The notes under the pieces: model-generated | The model's input: the letters and a program-made list of their open reading frames with translations, nothing else | What the model was told of the DNA's origin: nothing | Databases searched by the model: none | Made by a program: the position numbers and the translations under genes | Origin: Schizochytrium sp. TIO01 | Lineage: Eukaryota > Protista > Bigyra: Labyrinthulomycetes | Direction of reading: 5' to 3' | DNA length: 64,000 nt | NCBI GenBank assembly: GCA_004764695.1 | Contig: SMSO01000034.1 | Coordinates: 558,001 to 622,000 of the forward strand | Shown here: piece after piece, positions 904-64,000 of the stretch | How positions within the stretch are numbered: position 1 is the first letter of the stretch | Layout: each line of letters starts with the position of its first letter

Positions 904-3845
904 TTCCAGGAGAGATGGATTCATGTAGTAATTAAGGAGGCTAAGACATTCTTGGAAAAATTTTAGAGATAATTGATGGGGTTAGGTTAACTCACCCTCT
1001 TCAACCATCGATTCAAGTTACACCATACTTGGGTGCAGGTTATTTGTAGTCACACTTTTGATTCCTGACTCCGGCAGCCACATGAATCTGACGACCTACT
1101 CTTGTTCTATTGTATGCCCTATGTCTACGAGGGTTTTACAAAGGGACGCTGCCAAGAACTATAGTAGTGTCTTGTCCACTAGTCCCTTCGATTGGAAATC
1201 TCAGAAGTATCTTTATCATCTACATTTTGAGCGGATCCTACACTTGAATATGAAATAAATATCTGTGCTGTCCTTGTGCTCCTAATCTTTATCTTGCAAT
1301 GTGAATCTTCGATGGTCTTGCATATCGGATGATGAAGCTTTACAAGAAATTACTTGGCGGTTCGTTTGATCTGAGATTTTCCTTGAAAATTAATCTAAGA
1401 ATTCAGAAAAAGTCTGAGGTATCTTAAAAGAAAGTCAAGAAATTGAAATTTATGTCATTGAATTCCTCATTTTGTGAGAAACACGCATGGTAGTTTTTTG
1501 AAGTCATAAAATTTAGAGCTCAGAAACGAAATAACCAAATCATGAATTCAAAGGCCATGGATTAGATAGAATAAGCAGCACATATCTATTCATTAATATC
1601 GAATGCGATGGGTATTCATTTCAAGGTTAGAAATAAATATGACCGGAAAGATGTCTTACTGTGCGCCATGTTTTGGTTTTCTGTTTTACTATTGGGCTAG
1701 TACAGTTTACTTGAATTCCGTTATACATAAATCTCAACTTGCAACGCTCTGCACAAACTCCACCATAGCTATGACAGACTACTTATGCCTTTATCTAACC
1801 TTAGATCTATGCGTGTTATAGTTATACCAAGTTGTCGCAGTAATCGTAGTTTCACTATGTGTATACTACGTAAGATTGAGCAGGAAATCAGTATAAATTT
1901 TTGTATATGGATATTTGGAATTACATTCAATTGCCTAGCTTGTTTAACTAGGTGTATTTCCCCCCAAATTTGACAACAATCTACATACCTTCTCTAGACG
2001 CAGAAATGCAAACTTTAAGAGTACTTCTCTGATTTGTTTCCTTGGTCTCTTTCCTAAGAATGCTTCTCAAAGATTGAGCGGGCCACCACTTCGTAGGCTA
2101 TTGGAAGCAAGAGCCGATGGTTCCTGCACAGTCTTGCTGCAGTATACCTGGATACATGTTGTGCAATTTATCACAGGCATGTGCACAACACTTTACTACA
2201 ACATAAGAAACGCCTCCTCTCAGATAGACCGACTGCTGGTTTTTTATTGCTGCTTGTGAGACCTCTTCCATTCCAAGTTTCAAGTGGAATATGATCCATT
2301 AGGATGACTACCCTCCACCGACCTTCGGATGCCGCTGTCATCACACAAACCTAGCCCTCATTGACAATATACTTCACTAACAAGCTCTTTCTTTGGCTAG
2401 AAAGATATTTCATTCCGTTTTGGTGAGTTCTTGGTAAAAATTATCCCACTTCAATTGCCGTTCGCGCGTATCTATTATCCTTCTTATGTGTCAAAAAATT
2501 GCACAGGCGTCGCATCCTGGGAGTATCATCTAGGAGCTAGAGGAGATCTTTACGCTCTGTATTCGATTCTATCTTCATGGGCTAGAATGACAAGATATAA
2601 AATTGAGGGTCGCGAAGCAGATCGTTGGGTATGTAAACTTCTTCGTTTGCACTCTAGAGACTGTGGTTTGGGACCTGTGAGGGGTCTCTTTGAAAGAAGT
2701 GGCCGCAGCGACATCAAAGACCATAACAATTAAACAAGACGACATGACTCGGTGCGTACAAAGCAAGATTACCCAGCCTTCAACTTCACTAAAAGAGGAG
2801 GCTGCGAAGCAGACACTTTTTGAGTTGTTTTGCAGTGAAGTAGGTCCCTGCTGCTCGTATTTAAATTAAAAACAATGGAATGCAAATGAACTTCGAATCA
2901 CACGGGGACAGACAAAACGTCAATACTCTGAATGGTCGAAAGGGCGACAATTGTGCATGCGTAAGTATTTCCCGCTCTTTAATTACGTGGTGTTAGCTTT
3001 GCTGCTAGCTAGCAAAACCATTTCACAGGCTCTGCACAGTGTAGGTCGACTTCATTTAAGTAGGCTCTCCTTCAAAGTTTCATCCGCGTGCTGCTTGGCA
3101 TCTTCGTAGAGCAAGGTACGATTTTATCCAGCACGCCAAACCATAAAACTGGCCACGAAGCACCCGCCGGTTTACAAACCAAAGCAAGCCAGAACCAGCT
3201 GGAGTAATGGACATACTTGTCAGCAAACTCTTATGGTCTATCGTCTATGCATCTGTTTCTTCGCTTGGTTGCTTTATGCTCGTCTGTCGATTTGGGGCCA
3301 GGTGTGTGTGTGTGTACGCGCGTGAAAGACCTTCATCTCGTTCACGGTCATCAGCTCATTCACTCATTTTCAAGGAAAGGGGAAACCTTCTGGTACAGAC
3401 TCGCTTTGCAACTTAAATTGCGCTTGGGCATGCGAGCGTACCTCTGAAAAGTACCTGAACAGTCCTTCAGGTCATGTCAAAAGCAAGAAAAAAGCGAGCA
3501 ACGCACCGCACTAGAGTACGGGTTTTTCAGCAGATTGGCTCGTCCGTCTTGAAACTTGCAAGGCTCGCTCACTCGAACAGGTCTTTCGGATCTTAAAGAC
3601 GTAGCAGTAGCGATAATGGAAGAGTAGTTGAGTTTCTCGGCACCATCTCGTAGACAGCGATGGCTGGTGAGTGGATGGATGAGACTACCATGAGACCTGA
3701 CTTGAGGAAGGCTGTGCCGATCTTCTGGGAGAAGCATGTTGGGGAAGGCGGTCGAAGTCTAAGCTCTTCATTCAAAGATCCGTGCCTGTGCTTTGCGAGT
3801 GAACTCGCCGCTCCGACACGAGCTTTCGTTCGAGCCGGTCAGTAG

Positions 3846-60000: not shown

Positions 60001-62957
60001 GTTATTTCTCATTAGATTATGGCTTGAGAATCCGTCCTCGTCGACGCGTATGACTCCGTGAGGCATGACGGGCTGGCTGACAAGTTTTAATTCTTCAGGT
60101 TGCAAATAATCGCTTAGCTGACTTACTGACTGACTGTTGATTAACTGACAGTATCTTATCTTCGTGGATAGCAGCGGGTTCGCCCGTGTAAATGTCCATC
60201 TTGCAGTAGTGAGTCCCATTTTAGAGACTTACTTACATCTAAAGTGAAGTTATCTGATTTTGATCAAGATGATCTTTTAGTTTTGATAAACTCATCAGAA
60301 CTTCAGAGATTGCTGCCAGAGATGAAAAAAGGAGAACAAGAAAAACAATAAGAAACAGCAGCTATGCCTTCATTATGCGTGGCAGTAGTGCCTCTAGTAC
60401 CTATTGCGCGGCAGTAGAGAGCGAGCCCACTTTTTCACTTTTTTACTCTCATTCCACTTGAGACAAAACGGAGATATTTTAACAGTATTTTCAATCACCA
60501 GATTGTATCGTACCGTCAGCAAACGCATTACGCAGTTCAAGCAGCAAAGCAATGTCTTCAAAGAGGCAATTTTAGCAGCAGCTGAAGACCTTTGTCGACG
60601 AGCTTATCGAGTGCTGGGGAGTCCGTCTGTCTATCTACACGTGTGTCTACAAGTTGCATTTCAGTCATCTATTCTTCTGAGAAAATTAAGAATTAAAAAA
60701 AGTCATTTTGTAATCTACCTACTGCTATCCTACAACAAGTTGAACTTATGCCTTCTAACTCAAATAGACAACAAGCTTTATTGTCGTCATTCACGTGATG
60801 GGATCTGGTTGCTGCGGTTTGCGATGTGAGTGGCGAAGGAGGCCCATACCAAGTCGCGGCAGGGCTTAAATCTGAAAACTGGCCCTGTCCGTATTTATGA
60901 TGCAGCTCTCTGCAATTTCCCATGATGATGACTAAAGAATGAAGAAGCAATTGAAATGTTTTTATTTGTTTGTTTTTTATGCTCTCTCTTTTCATTAGAG
61001 TTGGGCTTTTTAGATTCCGATAAAAGAAAACTGAAAAGAGGGGAAATAAGCTTCATGTTCTAGTACTTCCATAACTTTATTTTTTGTTCTTATTGCCGCT
61101 ACTTTATTCACATTCTCTAAGAGAAACCTCAGGGATTTTCTCCCTCGGCATTGCGTAGGTAGGTACTTTATTCGCCTACCTTCCTAGTGAACGACTTGAG
61201 AACGTAAGAACCTACTTCGAACTTCTCCTAAAAACCATCATTTATAGGTGCCGTGATAACCTTAGCTATGCCCTATATATTGTAATATTTAAACTACTTT
61301 TTACTTTTAGTACTTTAAAAAAATAAAAATAAAAAATTCATCTAAGTTCACAGCCGAATTGCATTGCACTAGTACTTCTTTACCAAGTCGAGTGGGAAAA
61401 CATAGTTTTTGCAAGACTTGGCCCGATGCAATGCACGTCTTTGCATAATCGTGGGCGCGTTGAACTGCCCAAGAGCTGCTGCAACGCTGGAATGTGTACT
61501 ATTTATTTTCTAAACTAGAGTATGGACCCAAGAATACCTCACCCCCTGTTCTGGAGCTTTCCCTGTCCTCGTCATGAACGTAAGTTGGAAAGCATTCGAC
61601 GAATAAATGAATACGCCTTTGGCAGCCAGAAACAGGAAGTGAATCAGAGAAGCCTCAGCTTTGCAGGAAACGGCGCTGGATTTGGAAAGACCACCGCCCT
61701 TTAAGTTACCCAAGGCGGCACGTGAGAACTACTTCGCGCCCAGCACTTCCAGTCTAGACCACGACGAGGCCTGCTACAAATACGCACTCACCTGAGGTTC
61801 TCTTCTTTTGCTGAGCTTTTCACGGGTATCTTTCGGAACCGTGGCTGCCTGATGTTATCATCCGCCGAAAGCCAAGCAAGTCTTGCAAGGCGCTTGCATC
61901 CATCCATAGCGCGAAGATCGACAACGTCTAAACTCAACACCAAGTGGTGGTGGCTTCTCACATCTCTGTGCACGTGACGATTTTTGGTAGGCGCTTTTTA
62001 GTAATGTTTTATTTTTTTAAAGAAGAAGAAGAAGAAGAAGAAGAAGAAGAAGAATACTCTAGCTGGTAATAACTTTCTTCAGAGCTGTATTGCGCTCTTT
62101 TCTACCGCTTTCCTTCCTCCTATTCCTTTCAAGTTCTTTCTCTTTCTTATGAGTTGTTTTTCGTTTATTTATTTTTTAATGAAAGTAATTTAATGAAAGT
62201 AAGCGTCGACTCATCACACTGAAAGTGAGCGACGTGAGTCCTACAGTATGGGCTGATAGGTTGATAGCTCTGACGGAGCTCGCGTTGTGAGAAACCCTTC
62301 TAGGAACCTGCTAGCGTAGTGGTAGTGTCAGGAGGTAAGGAGTTCCTCAAAAAAAGAAAGAATGAAAACTGAGAGAGTGAAAGAGAAGAGTGACTCAGAA
62401 GAATAGAGATTACAATTCTTGCACACATACAAGTTGGGTAGGATAGGGGAGGCTTCCTTGTAAACAAAGAAGCTCAATACATGAGAAGTAAAAATGTATT
62501 TCTTTCTTTTCCTTTCCCTCTTCTTATTATTGCTTTCTTTCCCCTTTTAGGCGGGAAAAAATTTCTTTATTCGTTTATTTAGTTTGTTTGTGTGCTTGAA
62601 CATTAAATCATTTTCTTAACAAGCGTGCAAGAGCACTCCGTAGAGCAGCAAAACTGCATTCTCCGGTCACCACGCCAACCCAAACTGTAGTCGAGACGCA
62701 ACGTCTGCAGATCAAGCAGAACCTTAGAAGCTCTGCCTCCACACGTGGCAGCCCCCTTCCCGTTGGCATTCTGGGTTGCAAAGCAGCTGAGCTGTTGCAG
62801 TCTTGAGCAGGTAGAAGTACTACACGACCTCTCCAGGTACCGCTTCTGCTTCGTGAGACTTACTCCACGTCGCCATCGTTACTTCAGAGGTCCGTAAATA
62901 AGACATTGGTCGATCGCCGCCAAACTTTTGTAGACAAAAAAACAAACAGAAAGCACA

Positions 62958-64000
62958 ATGGGCTGCGTGTTGAGCAAAAACCCTGGTCGTGACCTAAGCG
63001 AGGTCGACGTTATCTTCTTCGATATGGATGACACCTTGTATCAGAACAACTGGGCAACTGCCGAGCGGCTCAAAGAATCCATTGAGCGTTACACTGTGGA
63101 TGACCTTGGCCTTGATGAAGGCTATGCGTTCCAGTTGTACCTCGAGCATGGCACTGCTCTTCGCGGCCTGCTCAAGATGAACCTCTTGCCCGAAGATCAA
63201 ATCGAGCACTTCTTGCAGAAGATCCACGATGTCTCCCTTGAGGAAATTGAGCCCAACCCAGCCCTCGCCAAGATGCTCAAAGAGCTCTCTGAGCACAAAC
63301 GCATCTGGATCTTCACTGCCTCAATCAAGGAGCATGCCCAGCGCTGCCTCGCCAAGCTCGGAATACCTGAGAGCATCTTTGAGGGAATTATTGACTCTCG
63401 CAGTGTTGGTCTCGTCACAAAGCACTCCCCAATGGCCTTTGTCCAGGCCATGGAAATCGCCAACGTTACTGAAGGCCACAACTGCATGTTCTTCGATGAT
63501 TCTGTCAAGAATATCAAGACTGCTAAGCAGATGGGTTGGCACACTTGCACAGTCGGTCGCGAGCGTGGCACTGGTGAGCCACTCAACTGCCCTGACGCTG
63601 ATTTCGCAGTAGACTCTGTCATGGAGCTCCCTGAGAAGATCCCGGATCTTTTCCTTGGTGAACGTCACAACAACTCTGTGATTGCCGTGCAGGACGCCAC
63701 TACTGGAGATGCCTCGGACCCATACTCTGCCAAGGTTGTCGAGGACGAGTCTGATGATGAGTCTGATGACGGCAAGCACGAGGAAGTTGAGCCAGAGGAC
63801 AGCGATGTGGACATCGACGATGTTCTGATGGAGGACGAGGTCGAGGATGAGGTCCCGGAGGCCCAGCCTCGCCACGCCATTTTCATTCTTGGTGGCCCTG
63901 GTTCCGGCAAGGGTACGCAGTCTCAAAAGCTTCAGAAGAAGAAGAAGGGTGATGTTGTGCATCTGAGTGCTGGCGACCTTCTTCGTGCGGAGCTCCAGAA
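62958..64000 (+). CDS. Fusion of HAD pyrimidine 5'-nucleotidase (SDT1/PHM8-type) and UMP-CMP/adenylate kinase; N-terminal MGC acylation motif; 3'-truncated by the window end
   Basis: Manual translation gives 347 codons with no stop: MGCVLSK...IFFDMDDTLY (motif I, 63021), WIFTAS (II), TKHSP (III), MFFDDSVKNI (IV, 63489), an acidic linker, then IFILGGPGSGKGTQ (P-loop, 63891) and HLSAGDLLRAE (63960). Strong codon bias. Absent from the ORF track because it has no stop in the window. Confidence 0.95.
   Translation, partial: MGCVLSKNPGRDLSEVDVIFFDMDDTLYQNNWATAERLKESIERYTVDDLGLDEGYAFQLYLEHGTALRGLLKMNLLPEDQIEHFLQKIHDVSLEEIEPNPALAKMLKELSEHKRIWIFTASIKEHAQRCLAKLGIPESIFEGIIDSRSVGLVTKHSPMAFVQAMEIANVTEGHNCMFFDDSVKNIKTAKQMGWHTCTVGRERGTGEPLNCPDADFAVDSVMELPEKIPDLFLGERHNNSVIAVQDATTGDASDPYSAKVVEDESDDESDDGKHEEVEPEDSDVDIDDVLMEDEVEDEVPEAQPRHAIFILGGPGSGKGTQSQKLQKKKKGDVVHLSAGDLLRAELQ

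What the first reader, a model, noticed from the sequence alone, without database searches (positions are those of the whole stretch)
62958..64000. Membrane-targeted pyrimidine 5'-nucleotidase / UMP-CMP kinase fusion: opposing enzymes for the same NMP on one chain
Seen: one stop-free frame joins a complete HAD domain (DMDDTLY, FTAS, K, FFDDS..NI) through a ~70-aa very acidic linker to an NMP-kinase start (GGPGSGKGTQ, HLSAGDLLRAE). The ORF track misses it. Established: DxDDTLY/FFDDS marks SDT1/PHM8-type pyrimidine nucleotidases. HLSAG (Ala) is typical of UMP-CMP kinases, whereas AK1-type adenylate kinases have HLSTG. Inference: both domains would act on UMP/CMP in opposite directions (to nucleoside or to NDP). 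The protein could therefore be a branch-point switch, or a proofreader that removes damaged or non-canonical NMPs before phosphorylation. I know of no characterised protein with this architecture.
Basis: partly seen in the sequence, partly recalled or inferred. Interest (0 to 1): 0.85.

Follow-up and report, generated by a model that had tools for sequence, protein, structure and literature searches.

The report
Lipid-anchored nucleotidase fused to UMP-CMP kinase
A real, expressed, intron-free gene of a marine protist joins a nucleotide-dephosphorylating enzyme and a pyrimidine-nucleotide kinase on one probably membrane-anchored chain; the design recurs in a few zoospore-forming microbes and I found no study of it.

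Summary
The frame that starts at window 62958 runs past the window edge. It closes as one 503-aa ORF (G000:C33:620958-622469). It has four parts:
- an MGCVLSK start, which fits the myristoyl plus palmitoyl signal;
- an SDT1-type HAD nucleotidase (residues 16-235);
- a disordered linker of 67 residues, 27 of them Asp or Glu;
- a complete short-LID UMP-CMP kinase (residues 305-498).

All catalytic motifs of both domains are intact. Transcript-like contigs of about 2.2-2.3 kb from four studies cover the whole ORF without a joint. The near-identical protein (one D17E difference) is also in a transcriptome collection.

The architecture is not unique. About 20 fused homologues exist, including Batrachochytrium salamandrivorans KAH9258139.1 and an Aplanochytrium transcript. 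They make only four clusters at 50% identity among 1.84 billion representatives. Their HAD domains form one clade, and most keep the MGC start. Five paper searches found no study of the fusion.

SDT1-family base preference varies (pyrimidine, GMP, XMP), and the known switch residue has no clear counterpart here.

Verdict: a real, rare, uncharacterised bifunctional enzyme and a new variant of known kinds. The same stretch was noted once more by this scan, in an overlapping window (s1-833220).

The parts
62660..62957 (+). 5' untranslated region. The transcript-like contigs begin at window 62660-62704. There is no ATG before the start codon.
   Evidence: Contig ends at L001 1161-1205 in four runs, with an Illumina adapter as the loose end in X7. 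No ATG in the 298 nt upstream. Start context is ACAATGG.
62958..62978 (+). Start codon and MGCVLSK. Gly2, Cys3 and Ser6 fit the N-myristoylation plus S-palmitoylation signal, so this is a probable membrane anchor.
   Evidence: Translation. MGC is at the aligned start in 12 of 16 relatives that have an N-terminus, and MGH, MGG or MGGC in three more. The stand-alone SDT1-like proteins sampled lack it. Residues 1-10 are disordered in the model.
63003..63662 (+). SDT1-type HAD 5'-nucleotidase domain (residues 16-235). Motif I D22-x-D24-x-T26 lies at 63021-63035. Motif II is T120, motif III is K155 and motif IV is D180/D181.
   Evidence: Pfam PF00702 and PF13419. TIGR01993 scores 139.7 bits. PDB sequence hits are Sdt1/SSM1 3ONN at 1e-24 and XMP phosphatase 7EF6 at 1e-19. 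Fold TMt is 0.76-0.83. The motif residues are invariant in 19 fused homologues. pLDDT is above 90 over most of the domain.
63666..63866 (+). Disordered acidic linker (residues 237-303). It holds Ser-Asp/Glu clusters that resemble casein-kinase-2 sites (ESDDESDD).
   Evidence: 27 Asp or Glu and 2 Lys or Arg in 67 residues. pLDDT is below 50 over 238-301. The linker is not conserved between lineages; the chytrid-type relatives have a basic KRFS..RRLS linker instead.
63870..64000 (+). First 43 residues of the UMP-CMP kinase domain (residues 305-347). The P-loop G312-T320 lies at 63891-63917, followed by HLSAGDLLR. The domain continues to residue 498, and the stop codon is at G000:C33:622467-622469 (L001 2968-2970), outside the window.
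   Evidence: full ORF. Pfam ADK at 310-472, 116.7 bits. TIGR01359 at 184.8 bits against AK1 at 139.2. Human CMPK1 1TEV scores 160 bits against about 110 for AK1. Fold TMt is 0.90-0.93 to yeast and Dictyostelium UMP kinases.

Best explanation
This is one intron-free, expressed gene for a 503-aa bifunctional enzyme.

Shown:
- It is a single ORF and a single transcript.
- An SDT1-type HAD phosphatase domain and a short-LID UMP-CMP-type NMP kinase domain both keep every catalytic residue.
- The two domains are joined by a flexible acidic linker.
- An MGC start is conserved in the family.

Inferred:
- Gly2 is myristoylated and Cys3 palmitoylated, which holds the protein on the cytosolic face of a membrane.
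- There the two independent domains compete for the local pool of pyrimidine nucleoside monophosphates. The kinase uses ATP to make UDP or CDP, which retains the nucleotide and commits it to use. The nucleotidase hydrolyses the NMP through an aspartyl-phosphate on Asp22 to a nucleoside that can leave through the cell's ENT-type transporters.
- The protein would therefore set the retain-or-release decision for salvaged or membrane-generated UMP/CMP.
- The variable, phosphorylatable linker is the likely control point.
For: - One ORF: 503 aa with no stop.
- One transcript: one whole contig of 2162-2305 nt per run in four studies lies on L001 1161/1205-3321/3479. There are no joints. The contig ends coincide, and an AATAAA sits just before the 3' end.
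- Expression: the near-identical 503-aa protein (one D17E difference) is in the MMETSP transcriptome set.
- Purifying selection: all 7 ORF differences in another strain fall on third codon positions, and 6 are synonymous.
- Domain identities.
- Catalytic residues: D22, D24, T120, K155, D180, K318, R343, R396, R432, R436, R444, D447 and R455 are invariant or nearly so across 19 fused homologues.
- Kinase specificity: N400 aligns with the Asn of human CMPK1 in the motif DGFPRNQDN.
- Selected unit: the HAD domains of the 18 fused proteins with intact kinases form one clade (SH-aLRT 93), and the fused kinase domains cluster too.
- Anchor: the MGC start is conserved in the family and absent from stand-alone HAD relatives.
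- Independent domains: two domains with pLDDT above 90, a disordered linker, and pTM 0.52.
- Salvage context: the genome holds a uridine kinase and three ENT-type nucleoside transporters. The SDT1-type domain is single-copy in the genome.
Against: - No enzyme assay exists.
- Both curated NCBIfam cut-offs are narrowly or moderately missed (139.7 against 142.9, and 184.8 against 207.6).
- SDT1-family base preference is tunable (PMC13059787; PDB 7EF6 is an XMP phosphatase). The cap region that holds the Sdt1-Asn/Ifn1-Arg switch is 4 residues shorter here, with Ala57 or a gap at that place.
- Two fused relatives (P0102 from Aplanochytrium, and P0172) have lost the kinase's NMP-binding arginines, so catalysis by the kinase is not essential to the family everywhere.
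- Acylation and location are predicted only.
- The runs are RNA only by the tool's guess.
- The genome has three other UMP-CMP-kinase-type domains, so this copy is not needed for bulk UDP or CDP synthesis.
Confidence: 0.45

Rival explanations
1. House-cleaning or a different substrate. The HAD domain does not take normal UMP or CMP. It takes another phosphate ester instead: a purine NMP such as GMP, IMP or XMP, NMN, or damaged or modified pyrimidine NMPs. The fusion would then either proofread what the kinase is offered or couple two different pathways.
For: Family members differ widely in substrate, and one cap residue switches the preference (PMC13059787). The XMP phosphatase 7EF6 is as good a structural match as Sdt1. 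The switch position is not Asn here. Close SDT1-type domains are also fused to NUDIX hydrolases and to RidA, which are typical sanitising partners.
Against: The best-scoring curated model is the pyrimidine 5'-nucleotidase equivalog TIGR01993. Fused domains usually share a metabolite. There is no direct evidence for any alternative substrate.
Confidence: 0.25
2. Sequential catabolic channel. The reversible kinase runs backwards (UDP or CDP plus ADP gives UMP or CMP plus ATP). The nucleotidase then pulls the equilibrium by hydrolysing the NMP. This would clear UDP and CMP, which inhibit glycosyl- and phospholipid-synthases, at the membrane where they are made.
For: NMP kinases are freely reversible (established knowledge). 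The conserved lipid anchor places the enzyme at membranes. Fusions often join consecutive steps.
Against: There is no evidence of direction. Nucleoside-diphosphate kinase normally recycles NDPs. No docking between the domains is predicted (pTM 0.52).
Confidence: 0.1
3. The kinase domain is mainly a nucleotide sensor. It binds ATP or NMP and regulates the nucleotidase, which is the only important catalyst.
For: In P0102 and P0172 the HAD motifs are intact, but the kinase has lost the LLR arginine, the PR arginine (PQ in P0102) and the RxDDN motif.
Against: In the window's protein and 17 relatives every kinase catalytic residue is kept. The two degenerate proteins sit on long branches and also lack the MG start.
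Confidence: 0.12
4. Artefact. Two neighbouring genes were joined by an assembly or reading error, or an unseen intron or stop separates the domains.
Against: The frame is continuous in the genome. Identical unspliced contigs come from four studies. The same 503-aa product, apart from one D17E difference, is in a transcriptome set. The same architecture is seen in about 20 other organisms.
Confidence: 0.02

Closest known systems
Saccharomyces cerevisiae Sdt1/Ssm1 (PDB 3ONN, 3OPX) and its relatives Phm8, S. pombe Ifn1 and Arabidopsis XMP phosphatase (7EF6)
   Same: It shares the HAD-IA fold with a helical cap, DxDxT, T/S, K and DD motifs, and the stacking Tyr (Y61 here). These are the best sequence and fold matches of residues 16-235.
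   Different: Those enzymes are soluble and single-domain, with no lipid anchor. Here the cap segment with the base-specificity switch is 4 residues shorter. The domain is followed by a kinase.
Eukaryotic UMP-CMP kinases: human CMPK1 (1TEV, 7E9V), yeast Ura6 (1UKY), Dictyostelium UmpK (1UKE, 2UKD)
   Same: Identity is 39-44%. It has the short LID with RxxxR..RxDDN, the P-loop, HLSAG, and Asn at the place where AK1 has Gln. TMt is 0.83-0.93.
   Different: Those kinases are stand-alone proteins of about 195 aa. Here the kinase is C-terminal to a phosphatase, and DGFPRN has become DGCPRD.
6-phosphofructo-2-kinase / fructose-2,6-bisphosphatase
   Same: The logic is the same (from established knowledge). 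A P-loop, NMP-kinase-like kinase and a phosphatase sit on one chain around one metabolite. The balance is set by phosphorylation of a flexible segment.
   Different: The phosphatase is of another fold (histidine phosphatase), the substrates are sugar phosphates, and the two reactions are true reverses of each other. There is no homology beyond the P-loop fold. This was not tested here.
Polynucleotide kinase/phosphatase (mammalian PNKP, phage T4 Pnkp)
   Same: A HAD phosphatase and a P-loop kinase share one polypeptide. In mammalian PNKP they are in the same order (from established knowledge).
   Different: PNKP acts on nucleic-acid ends. There is no match to the PNKP phosphatase model, and the PNKP-type kinase model AAA_33 scores only 20.4 bits against a cut-off of 27, compared with 116.7 bits for ADK.
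Unstudied fused homologues, such as Batrachochytrium salamandrivorans KAH9258139.1 ('pyrimidine 5'-nucleotidase') and the Aplanochytrium minuta MMETSP transcript
   Same: They have the same architecture at 41-58% identity over the full length, and most have the same MGC start.
   Different: The chytrid-type members have a basic linker with conserved KRFS and RRLS motifs instead of the acidic one. The Aplanochytrium copy has a degenerate kinase and no MG start.

Membership tests
SDT1/PHM8-type 5'-nucleotidase (HAD-IA; TIGR01993) | HAD motif I DxDxT with the nucleophile Asp | tested here: met
   D22-M-D24-D-T26. The aspartates are present in all 17 fused homologues whose sequence covers motif I (2 of the 19 are N-terminally truncated).
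SDT1/PHM8-type 5'-nucleotidase (HAD-IA; TIGR01993) | Motifs II (T/S), III (K) and IV (DD) | tested here: met
   T120, K155 and D180 are invariant, and D181 is at least 90% conserved.
SDT1/PHM8-type 5'-nucleotidase (HAD-IA; TIGR01993) | Score above the curated cut-off of the equivalog model | tested here: not met
   139.7 bits against a cut-off of 142.9, over the full model (1-182 of 183). It is a near miss.
SDT1/PHM8-type 5'-nucleotidase (HAD-IA; TIGR01993) | Fold and closest solved relatives | tested here: met
   Sdt1 3ONN at E 1e-24 and XMPP 7EF6 at 1e-19. TMt is 0.76-0.83.
SDT1/PHM8-type 5'-nucleotidase (HAD-IA; TIGR01993) | Pyrimidine NMP preference (Sdt1 has Asn where Ifn1 has Arg50) | tested here: inconclusive
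   The cap segment is 4 residues shorter. HMMER places a gap opposite the Sdt1 Asn pair, and helix register gives Ala57 (PMC13059787). The activity cannot be assayed here.
UMP-CMP kinase family (TIGR01359) | P-loop GxPGxGKGT and the NMP- and LID-site arginines | tested here: met
   G312-T320, R343, R396, R432, R436, R444, D446/D447 and R455 are invariant or at least 90% conserved.
UMP-CMP kinase family (TIGR01359) | Short LID, and closer to UMP-CMP kinases than to adenylate kinases | tested here: met
   CMPK1 scores 160 bits, Ura6 141 and UmpK 122, against about 104-112 for AK1. TIGR01359 scores 184.8 against 139.2 for TIGR01360.
UMP-CMP kinase family (TIGR01359) | Score above the curated cut-off | tested here: not met
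   184.8 bits against a cut-off of 207.6.
UMP-CMP kinase family (TIGR01359) | Asn in place of the adenine-reading Gln of AK1 (motif PRxxxN) | tested here: met
   N400 aligns with the second Asn of CMPK1 DGFPRNQDN and is at least 90% conserved. The role of this residue is from memory of the UmpK structures.
Dually acylated (myristoyl-Gly2, palmitoyl-Cys3) membrane proteins | The M-G-C-x-x-S/T start | tested here: met
   MGCVLSK. It is conserved in most of the family. It is the first AUG of the transcript.
Dually acylated (myristoyl-Gly2, palmitoyl-Cys3) membrane proteins | Actual lipid attachment and membrane location | not testable with these tools
   This needs metabolic labelling and localisation of G2A and C3S mutants.
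PNKP-type HAD phosphatase plus kinase | PNKP-type phosphatase and AAA_33-type kinase domains | tested here: not met
   There is no PNK3P match. AAA_33 scores 20.4 bits, below its cut-off of 27.

The most novel reading that the evidence does not exclude
The fusion is a membrane-resident (plasma-membrane or flagellar) metabolic switch for pyrimidine nucleotides. It would be a counterpart of PFK-2/FBPase-2. Phosphorylation of the linker, at acidic CK2-like sites here and at conserved KRFS/RRLS PKA-like sites in chytrids, would tip one chain between trapping pyrimidines (kinase) and releasing them (nucleotidase). The fusion would have arisen once and then been shared, by descent with loss or by transfer, between two unrelated groups of zoospore-forming osmotrophs: labyrinthulomycetes and chytrid fungi.
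Probability: 0.15. Interest if true: 0.75.

Novelty: new variant of a known kind. Interest (0 to 1): 0.55.

Why it matters
Nucleotidases and nucleotide kinases are normally separate soluble enzymes, and their balance sets nucleotide pools and the fate of nucleoside drugs. A natural chain that holds both at a membrane offers three things:
- a compact system to study how a cell decides between keeping and discarding a nucleotide;
- a 'Rosetta-stone' hint that SDT1-type nucleotidases and UMP-CMP kinases work on a common pool;
- a possible lineage marker, or a case of gene transfer, linking thraustochytrids and chytrids. Chytrids include the amphibian pathogen Batrachochytrium, and mammals have no such fused enzyme.

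It also corrects database annotation, because current records name only one of the two activities.

Tried and rejected
- Complex prediction of the HAD domain against the kinase domain gave no verdict (score 0.00). It is not evidence either way.
- The protein-atlas search gave only sub-0.9 leads. It pointed to other phosphatase-kinase architectures: HAD plus thymidylate kinase, NT5C plus guanylate kinase, HAD plus CoaE, and HAD plus PRK. I did not verify them.
- Five paper searches found nothing on the fusion.
- I tried to read the nucleotidase's base preference from the Ifn1/Sdt1 switch residue. The result was inconclusive because of a 4-residue length difference in the cap.
- The kinase tree alone did not resolve one origin against several. 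No conclusion on transfer is possible, because stand-alone kinases of about 200 aa were outside the length range of the search.
- I rejected a PNKP-like end-healing enzyme, an adenylate kinase of AK1 type, and an assembly or annotation artefact.
- The run kinds are only guessed as RNA, so I did not count the contigs as proof of expression on their own.
Full report
**1. The observation**

The window is G000:C33:558001-622000, in a 64-Mb genome of 37 contigs. Translation from the ATG at 62958 gives 347 codons without a stop up to the window end. The ORF tool omits the frame only because it runs off the window.

In the flanking genome (L001 = C33:619500-623500; L001 position = window position minus 61499) the frame closes as one 503-aa ORF, L001:1459-2970.

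**2. Is it one gene and one message?**

Contigs of four public runs from four different studies were laid on L001:800-3700.
- In each run exactly one whole contig (2162, 2287, 2298 or 2305 nt) lies on L001 1161/1205 to 3321/3479. There are no joints, so no intron.
- The contig ends agree between studies to within about 45 nt at the 5' end in all four. They fall at 3455-3479 at the 3' end in three; the fourth contig stops earlier, at 3321.
- One 5' end carries an Illumina adapter as its loose end.
- An AATAAA lies about 10-30 nt before the 3' ends of those three contigs. The 298-nt leader has no ATG, so the MGC codon is the first AUG. Its context is ACAATGG.

The tool marks these runs as RNA only by guess. 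However, contigs that stop at both ends of one gene are what transcripts give, not what genomic assemblies give. Independently, a protein with one D17E difference (P0001) is on record from the MMETSP transcriptome project.

A second strain differs at 12 positions. All 7 differences inside the ORF are at third codon positions, and 6 of them are synonymous (the seventh is D17E). That is the mark of purifying selection across both domains.

**3. Domain identities**

*HAD domain.*
- Pfam finds Hydrolase/HAD_2 at 16-199.
- The best NCBIfam model for this half is TIGR01993, pyrimidine 5'-nucleotidase. It scores 139.7 bits over the full model, against a cut-off of 142.9.
- Among solved structures, residues 1-235 match yeast Sdt1/Ssm1 (3ONN, E 1e-24) and Arabidopsis XMP phosphatase (7EF6, 1e-19).

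*Kinase domain.*
- Pfam finds ADK at 310-472.
- The best NCBIfam model is TIGR01359, the UMP-CMP kinase family, at 184.8 bits against a cut-off of 207.6. The AK1 model gets 139.2.
- Residues 300-503 match human UMP-CMP kinase (1TEV, 160 bits), yeast Ura6 (141) and Dictyostelium UmpK (122). AK1-type adenylate kinases trail at about 104-112 bits.

*Structure model.* An AlphaFold2 model built on 19 homologues has two confident domains (pLDDT mostly above 90). Residues 1-10 and the linker 238-301 are disordered, and pTM is 0.52, so there is no fixed mutual orientation.

*Fold search.* Foldseek gives TMt 0.90-0.93 to 1UKY, 5UKD and 2UKD for the kinase. It gives 0.76-0.83 to 7EF6 and 3ONN for the phosphatase. 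No chain covers both domains.

**4. Catalytic competence**

In an alignment of 19 fused proteins the following are invariant or at least 90% conserved:
- HAD domain: T120, K155, D180 and D181.
- Kinase domain: the P-loop (G312-T320), H335, S337, R343, R396, N400, R432, R436, R444, D446, D447 and R455.

The two motif I aspartates (D22, D24) are present in all 17 sequences that cover motif I. The other two are N-terminally truncated fragments.

N400 aligns with the second Asn of human CMPK1 in DGFPRNQDN, where AK1 has Gln. From memory of the UmpK structures, this residue discriminates pyrimidine from adenine.

The genome's own AK-type paralogue has HLSTG, while its UMP-CMP-type paralogues have HLSAG.

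**5. The anchor and the linker**

MGCVLSK has Gly2, Cys3 and Ser6. This is the classical myristoylation plus palmitoylation start, as in G-alpha-i and Src-family kinases (established knowledge).
- Among relatives with an N-terminus, 12 of 16 have MGC at the aligned start. In several, the gene caller added a spurious upstream extension.
- Three more have MGH, MGG or MGGC.
- None of the roughly 25 closest stand-alone SDT1-like proteins sampled has MGC; one begins MGH.

The linker here has 67 residues, 27 of them acidic, with ESDDESDD clusters. In the chytrid-type group it is replaced by a basic segment with conserved KRFS and RRLS motifs. So the linker is a lineage-specific, probably phosphorylatable tether rather than a conserved domain.

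**6. How common is it?**

A word-indexed search found about 20 proteins with the same two-domain architecture at 33-58% identity. Among them:
- P0002, at 53% identity, from a 253-kb contig;
- Batrachochytrium salamandrivorans KAH9258139.1, annotated only as 'pyrimidine 5'-nucleotidase';
- an Aplanochytrium minuta MMETSP transcript.

A profile search of 1.84 billion cluster representatives found only four fused clusters among the best 150 hits: P0017, P0001, P0102 and P0172. The family is real but rare.

Trees give the following.
- The HAD domains of the 18 members with intact kinases form one clade (SH-aLRT 93). The best tree puts all 21 fused proteins on one side of a branch, but with weak support (26).
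- The kinase domains fall into three fused groups. Two of them share a clade (support 92) with this genome's other UMP-CMP-type kinases. One origin is not excluded.

From the named relatives, the genome size and the lack of introns, the window's organism is probably a thraustochytrid. This is inference. The only other named holders are a chytrid fungus and Aplanochytrium.

**7. What speaks against 'the same NMP'**

The SDT1 family is not uniformly pyrimidine-specific.
- Sdt1 prefers UMP, CMP and NMN.
- Phm8 prefers CMP and XMP.
- S. pombe Ifn1 prefers GMP over IMP over CMP. A single Arg50-to-Asn change, Asn being the Sdt1 residue, switches its preference (PMC13059787).
- 7EF6 is an XMP phosphatase.

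Counting from the nucleophile, the stacking Tyr (Ifn1 Y54) corresponds to the invariant Y61 here. The segment before it is 4 residues shorter. The switch position falls on Ala57 or on a gap. The base preference of this nucleotidase therefore cannot be read from sequence.

Two fused relatives (P0102, P0172) keep all HAD motifs but have lost the kinase's NMP-site arginines and the RxDDN motif. They also lack the MG start. In those lineages the kinase half may have become a binding or regulatory module.

**8. Genomic context**

- The SDT1-type domain is single-copy in this genome.
- UMP-CMP-kinase-type domains occur three more times, never alone. Two sit in tandem behind a Suc_Fer-like domain, with a C-terminal hydrophobic tail (C30). 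One sits between an unknown N-terminal region and an aldo-keto reductase (C33, 4.75 Mb). The fused gene is therefore not the only route to UDP or CDP.
- A uridine kinase and three ENT-type nucleoside transporters are present, so a salvage-and-release route exists.

**9. Most likely mechanism**

*Shown:* one transcript, one chain, two intact catalytic centres, a flexible tether and a conserved acylation motif.

*Inferred:* the protein sits on the cytosolic face of a membrane. There the kinase (ATP plus UMP or CMP gives UDP or CDP) and the nucleotidase (NMP gives nucleoside plus phosphate, through aspartyl-phosphate on D22) compete for the local pyrimidine NMP pool. This would set retention against release. 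I give this 0.45.

*Rivals:*
- a different or non-canonical substrate for the HAD half, meaning proofreading or cross-pathway coupling (0.25);
- the kinase half as a sensor (0.12);
- a reverse-kinase-then-nucleotidase channel that clears UDP or CDP/CMP at membranes (0.10);
- artefact (0.02; refuted).

**10. Comparison with the known, and novelty**

Each half is an ordinary member-like relative of a well-known family, although both miss the strict curated cut-offs. The combination with a lipid anchor has no solved structure, and no paper was found in five searches. In logic it resembles PFK-2/FBPase-2, and in domain types it resembles PNKP. It is a member of neither.

I rate it a new variant of a known kind, with interest 0.55. 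It is a solid, testable and rare bifunctional enzyme, but its physiological role is unproven. The 'opposing enzymes on one substrate' idea is still an inference.

**Limits**

- The complex prediction gave no verdict.
- The run kinds are guessed.

Noticed in passing
G000:C30:8246265-8248496 (L003:34-2265, + strand): A paralogue of at least 743 aa. It has a Suc_Fer-like (thioredoxin-like 2Fe-2S) domain, two tandem UMP-CMP-kinase domains (47-49% identical to the window's kinase) and a C-terminal hydrophobic tail.
   Followed up: partly
G000:C33:4749646-4752156 (L005:703-3213, + strand): An 836-aa ORF with an unknown N-terminal region, one UMP-CMP-kinase domain and a C-terminal aldo/keto reductase. 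Together with the C30 gene, this means no stand-alone UMP-CMP kinase was seen in this genome.
   Followed up: partly
G000:C24:1603894-1607238 (L006:61-3405, - strand): A 1114-aa ORF with an NDK-like domain and AK1-type (HLSTG) adenylate kinase domains. It looks like a flagellar-type multi-kinase protein.
   Followed up: no
window 62935-62942 (L001 1436): The A7 run in the 5' UTR is one A longer in three of the four contigs, including the otherwise identical X1, and two A longer in the fourth. This is probably a homopolymer-length error of the genome assembly. It is outside the ORF.
   Followed up: no
window 62022-62055: A perfect (GAA)n microsatellite about 900 bp upstream of the gene.
   Followed up: no
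proteins P0226, P0233, P0201, P0203: Close SDT1-type HAD domains are also found fused to NUDIX hydrolases and to a RidA/YjgF domain, and as a tandem pair with a Dpy-30 docking motif. These are further unstudied nucleotide-handling fusions.
   Followed up: partly
alignment A1, linker columns about 400-440 (P0011-P0022, P0033, P0059): The chytrid-type fused proteins share a conserved basic linker motif, G-(G/D)-K-R-(F/Y)-S-x-(I/V)-A-x-R-(R/H)-(L/I/F)-S. It holds two protein-kinase-A-like sites. The window's lineage has an acidic linker there.
   Followed up: no
proteins P0102 (Aplanochytrium minuta) and P0172: These fused relatives have an intact HAD but a kinase domain that has lost its NMP-site and LID arginines. 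Both also lack the MG acylation start.
   Followed up: partly
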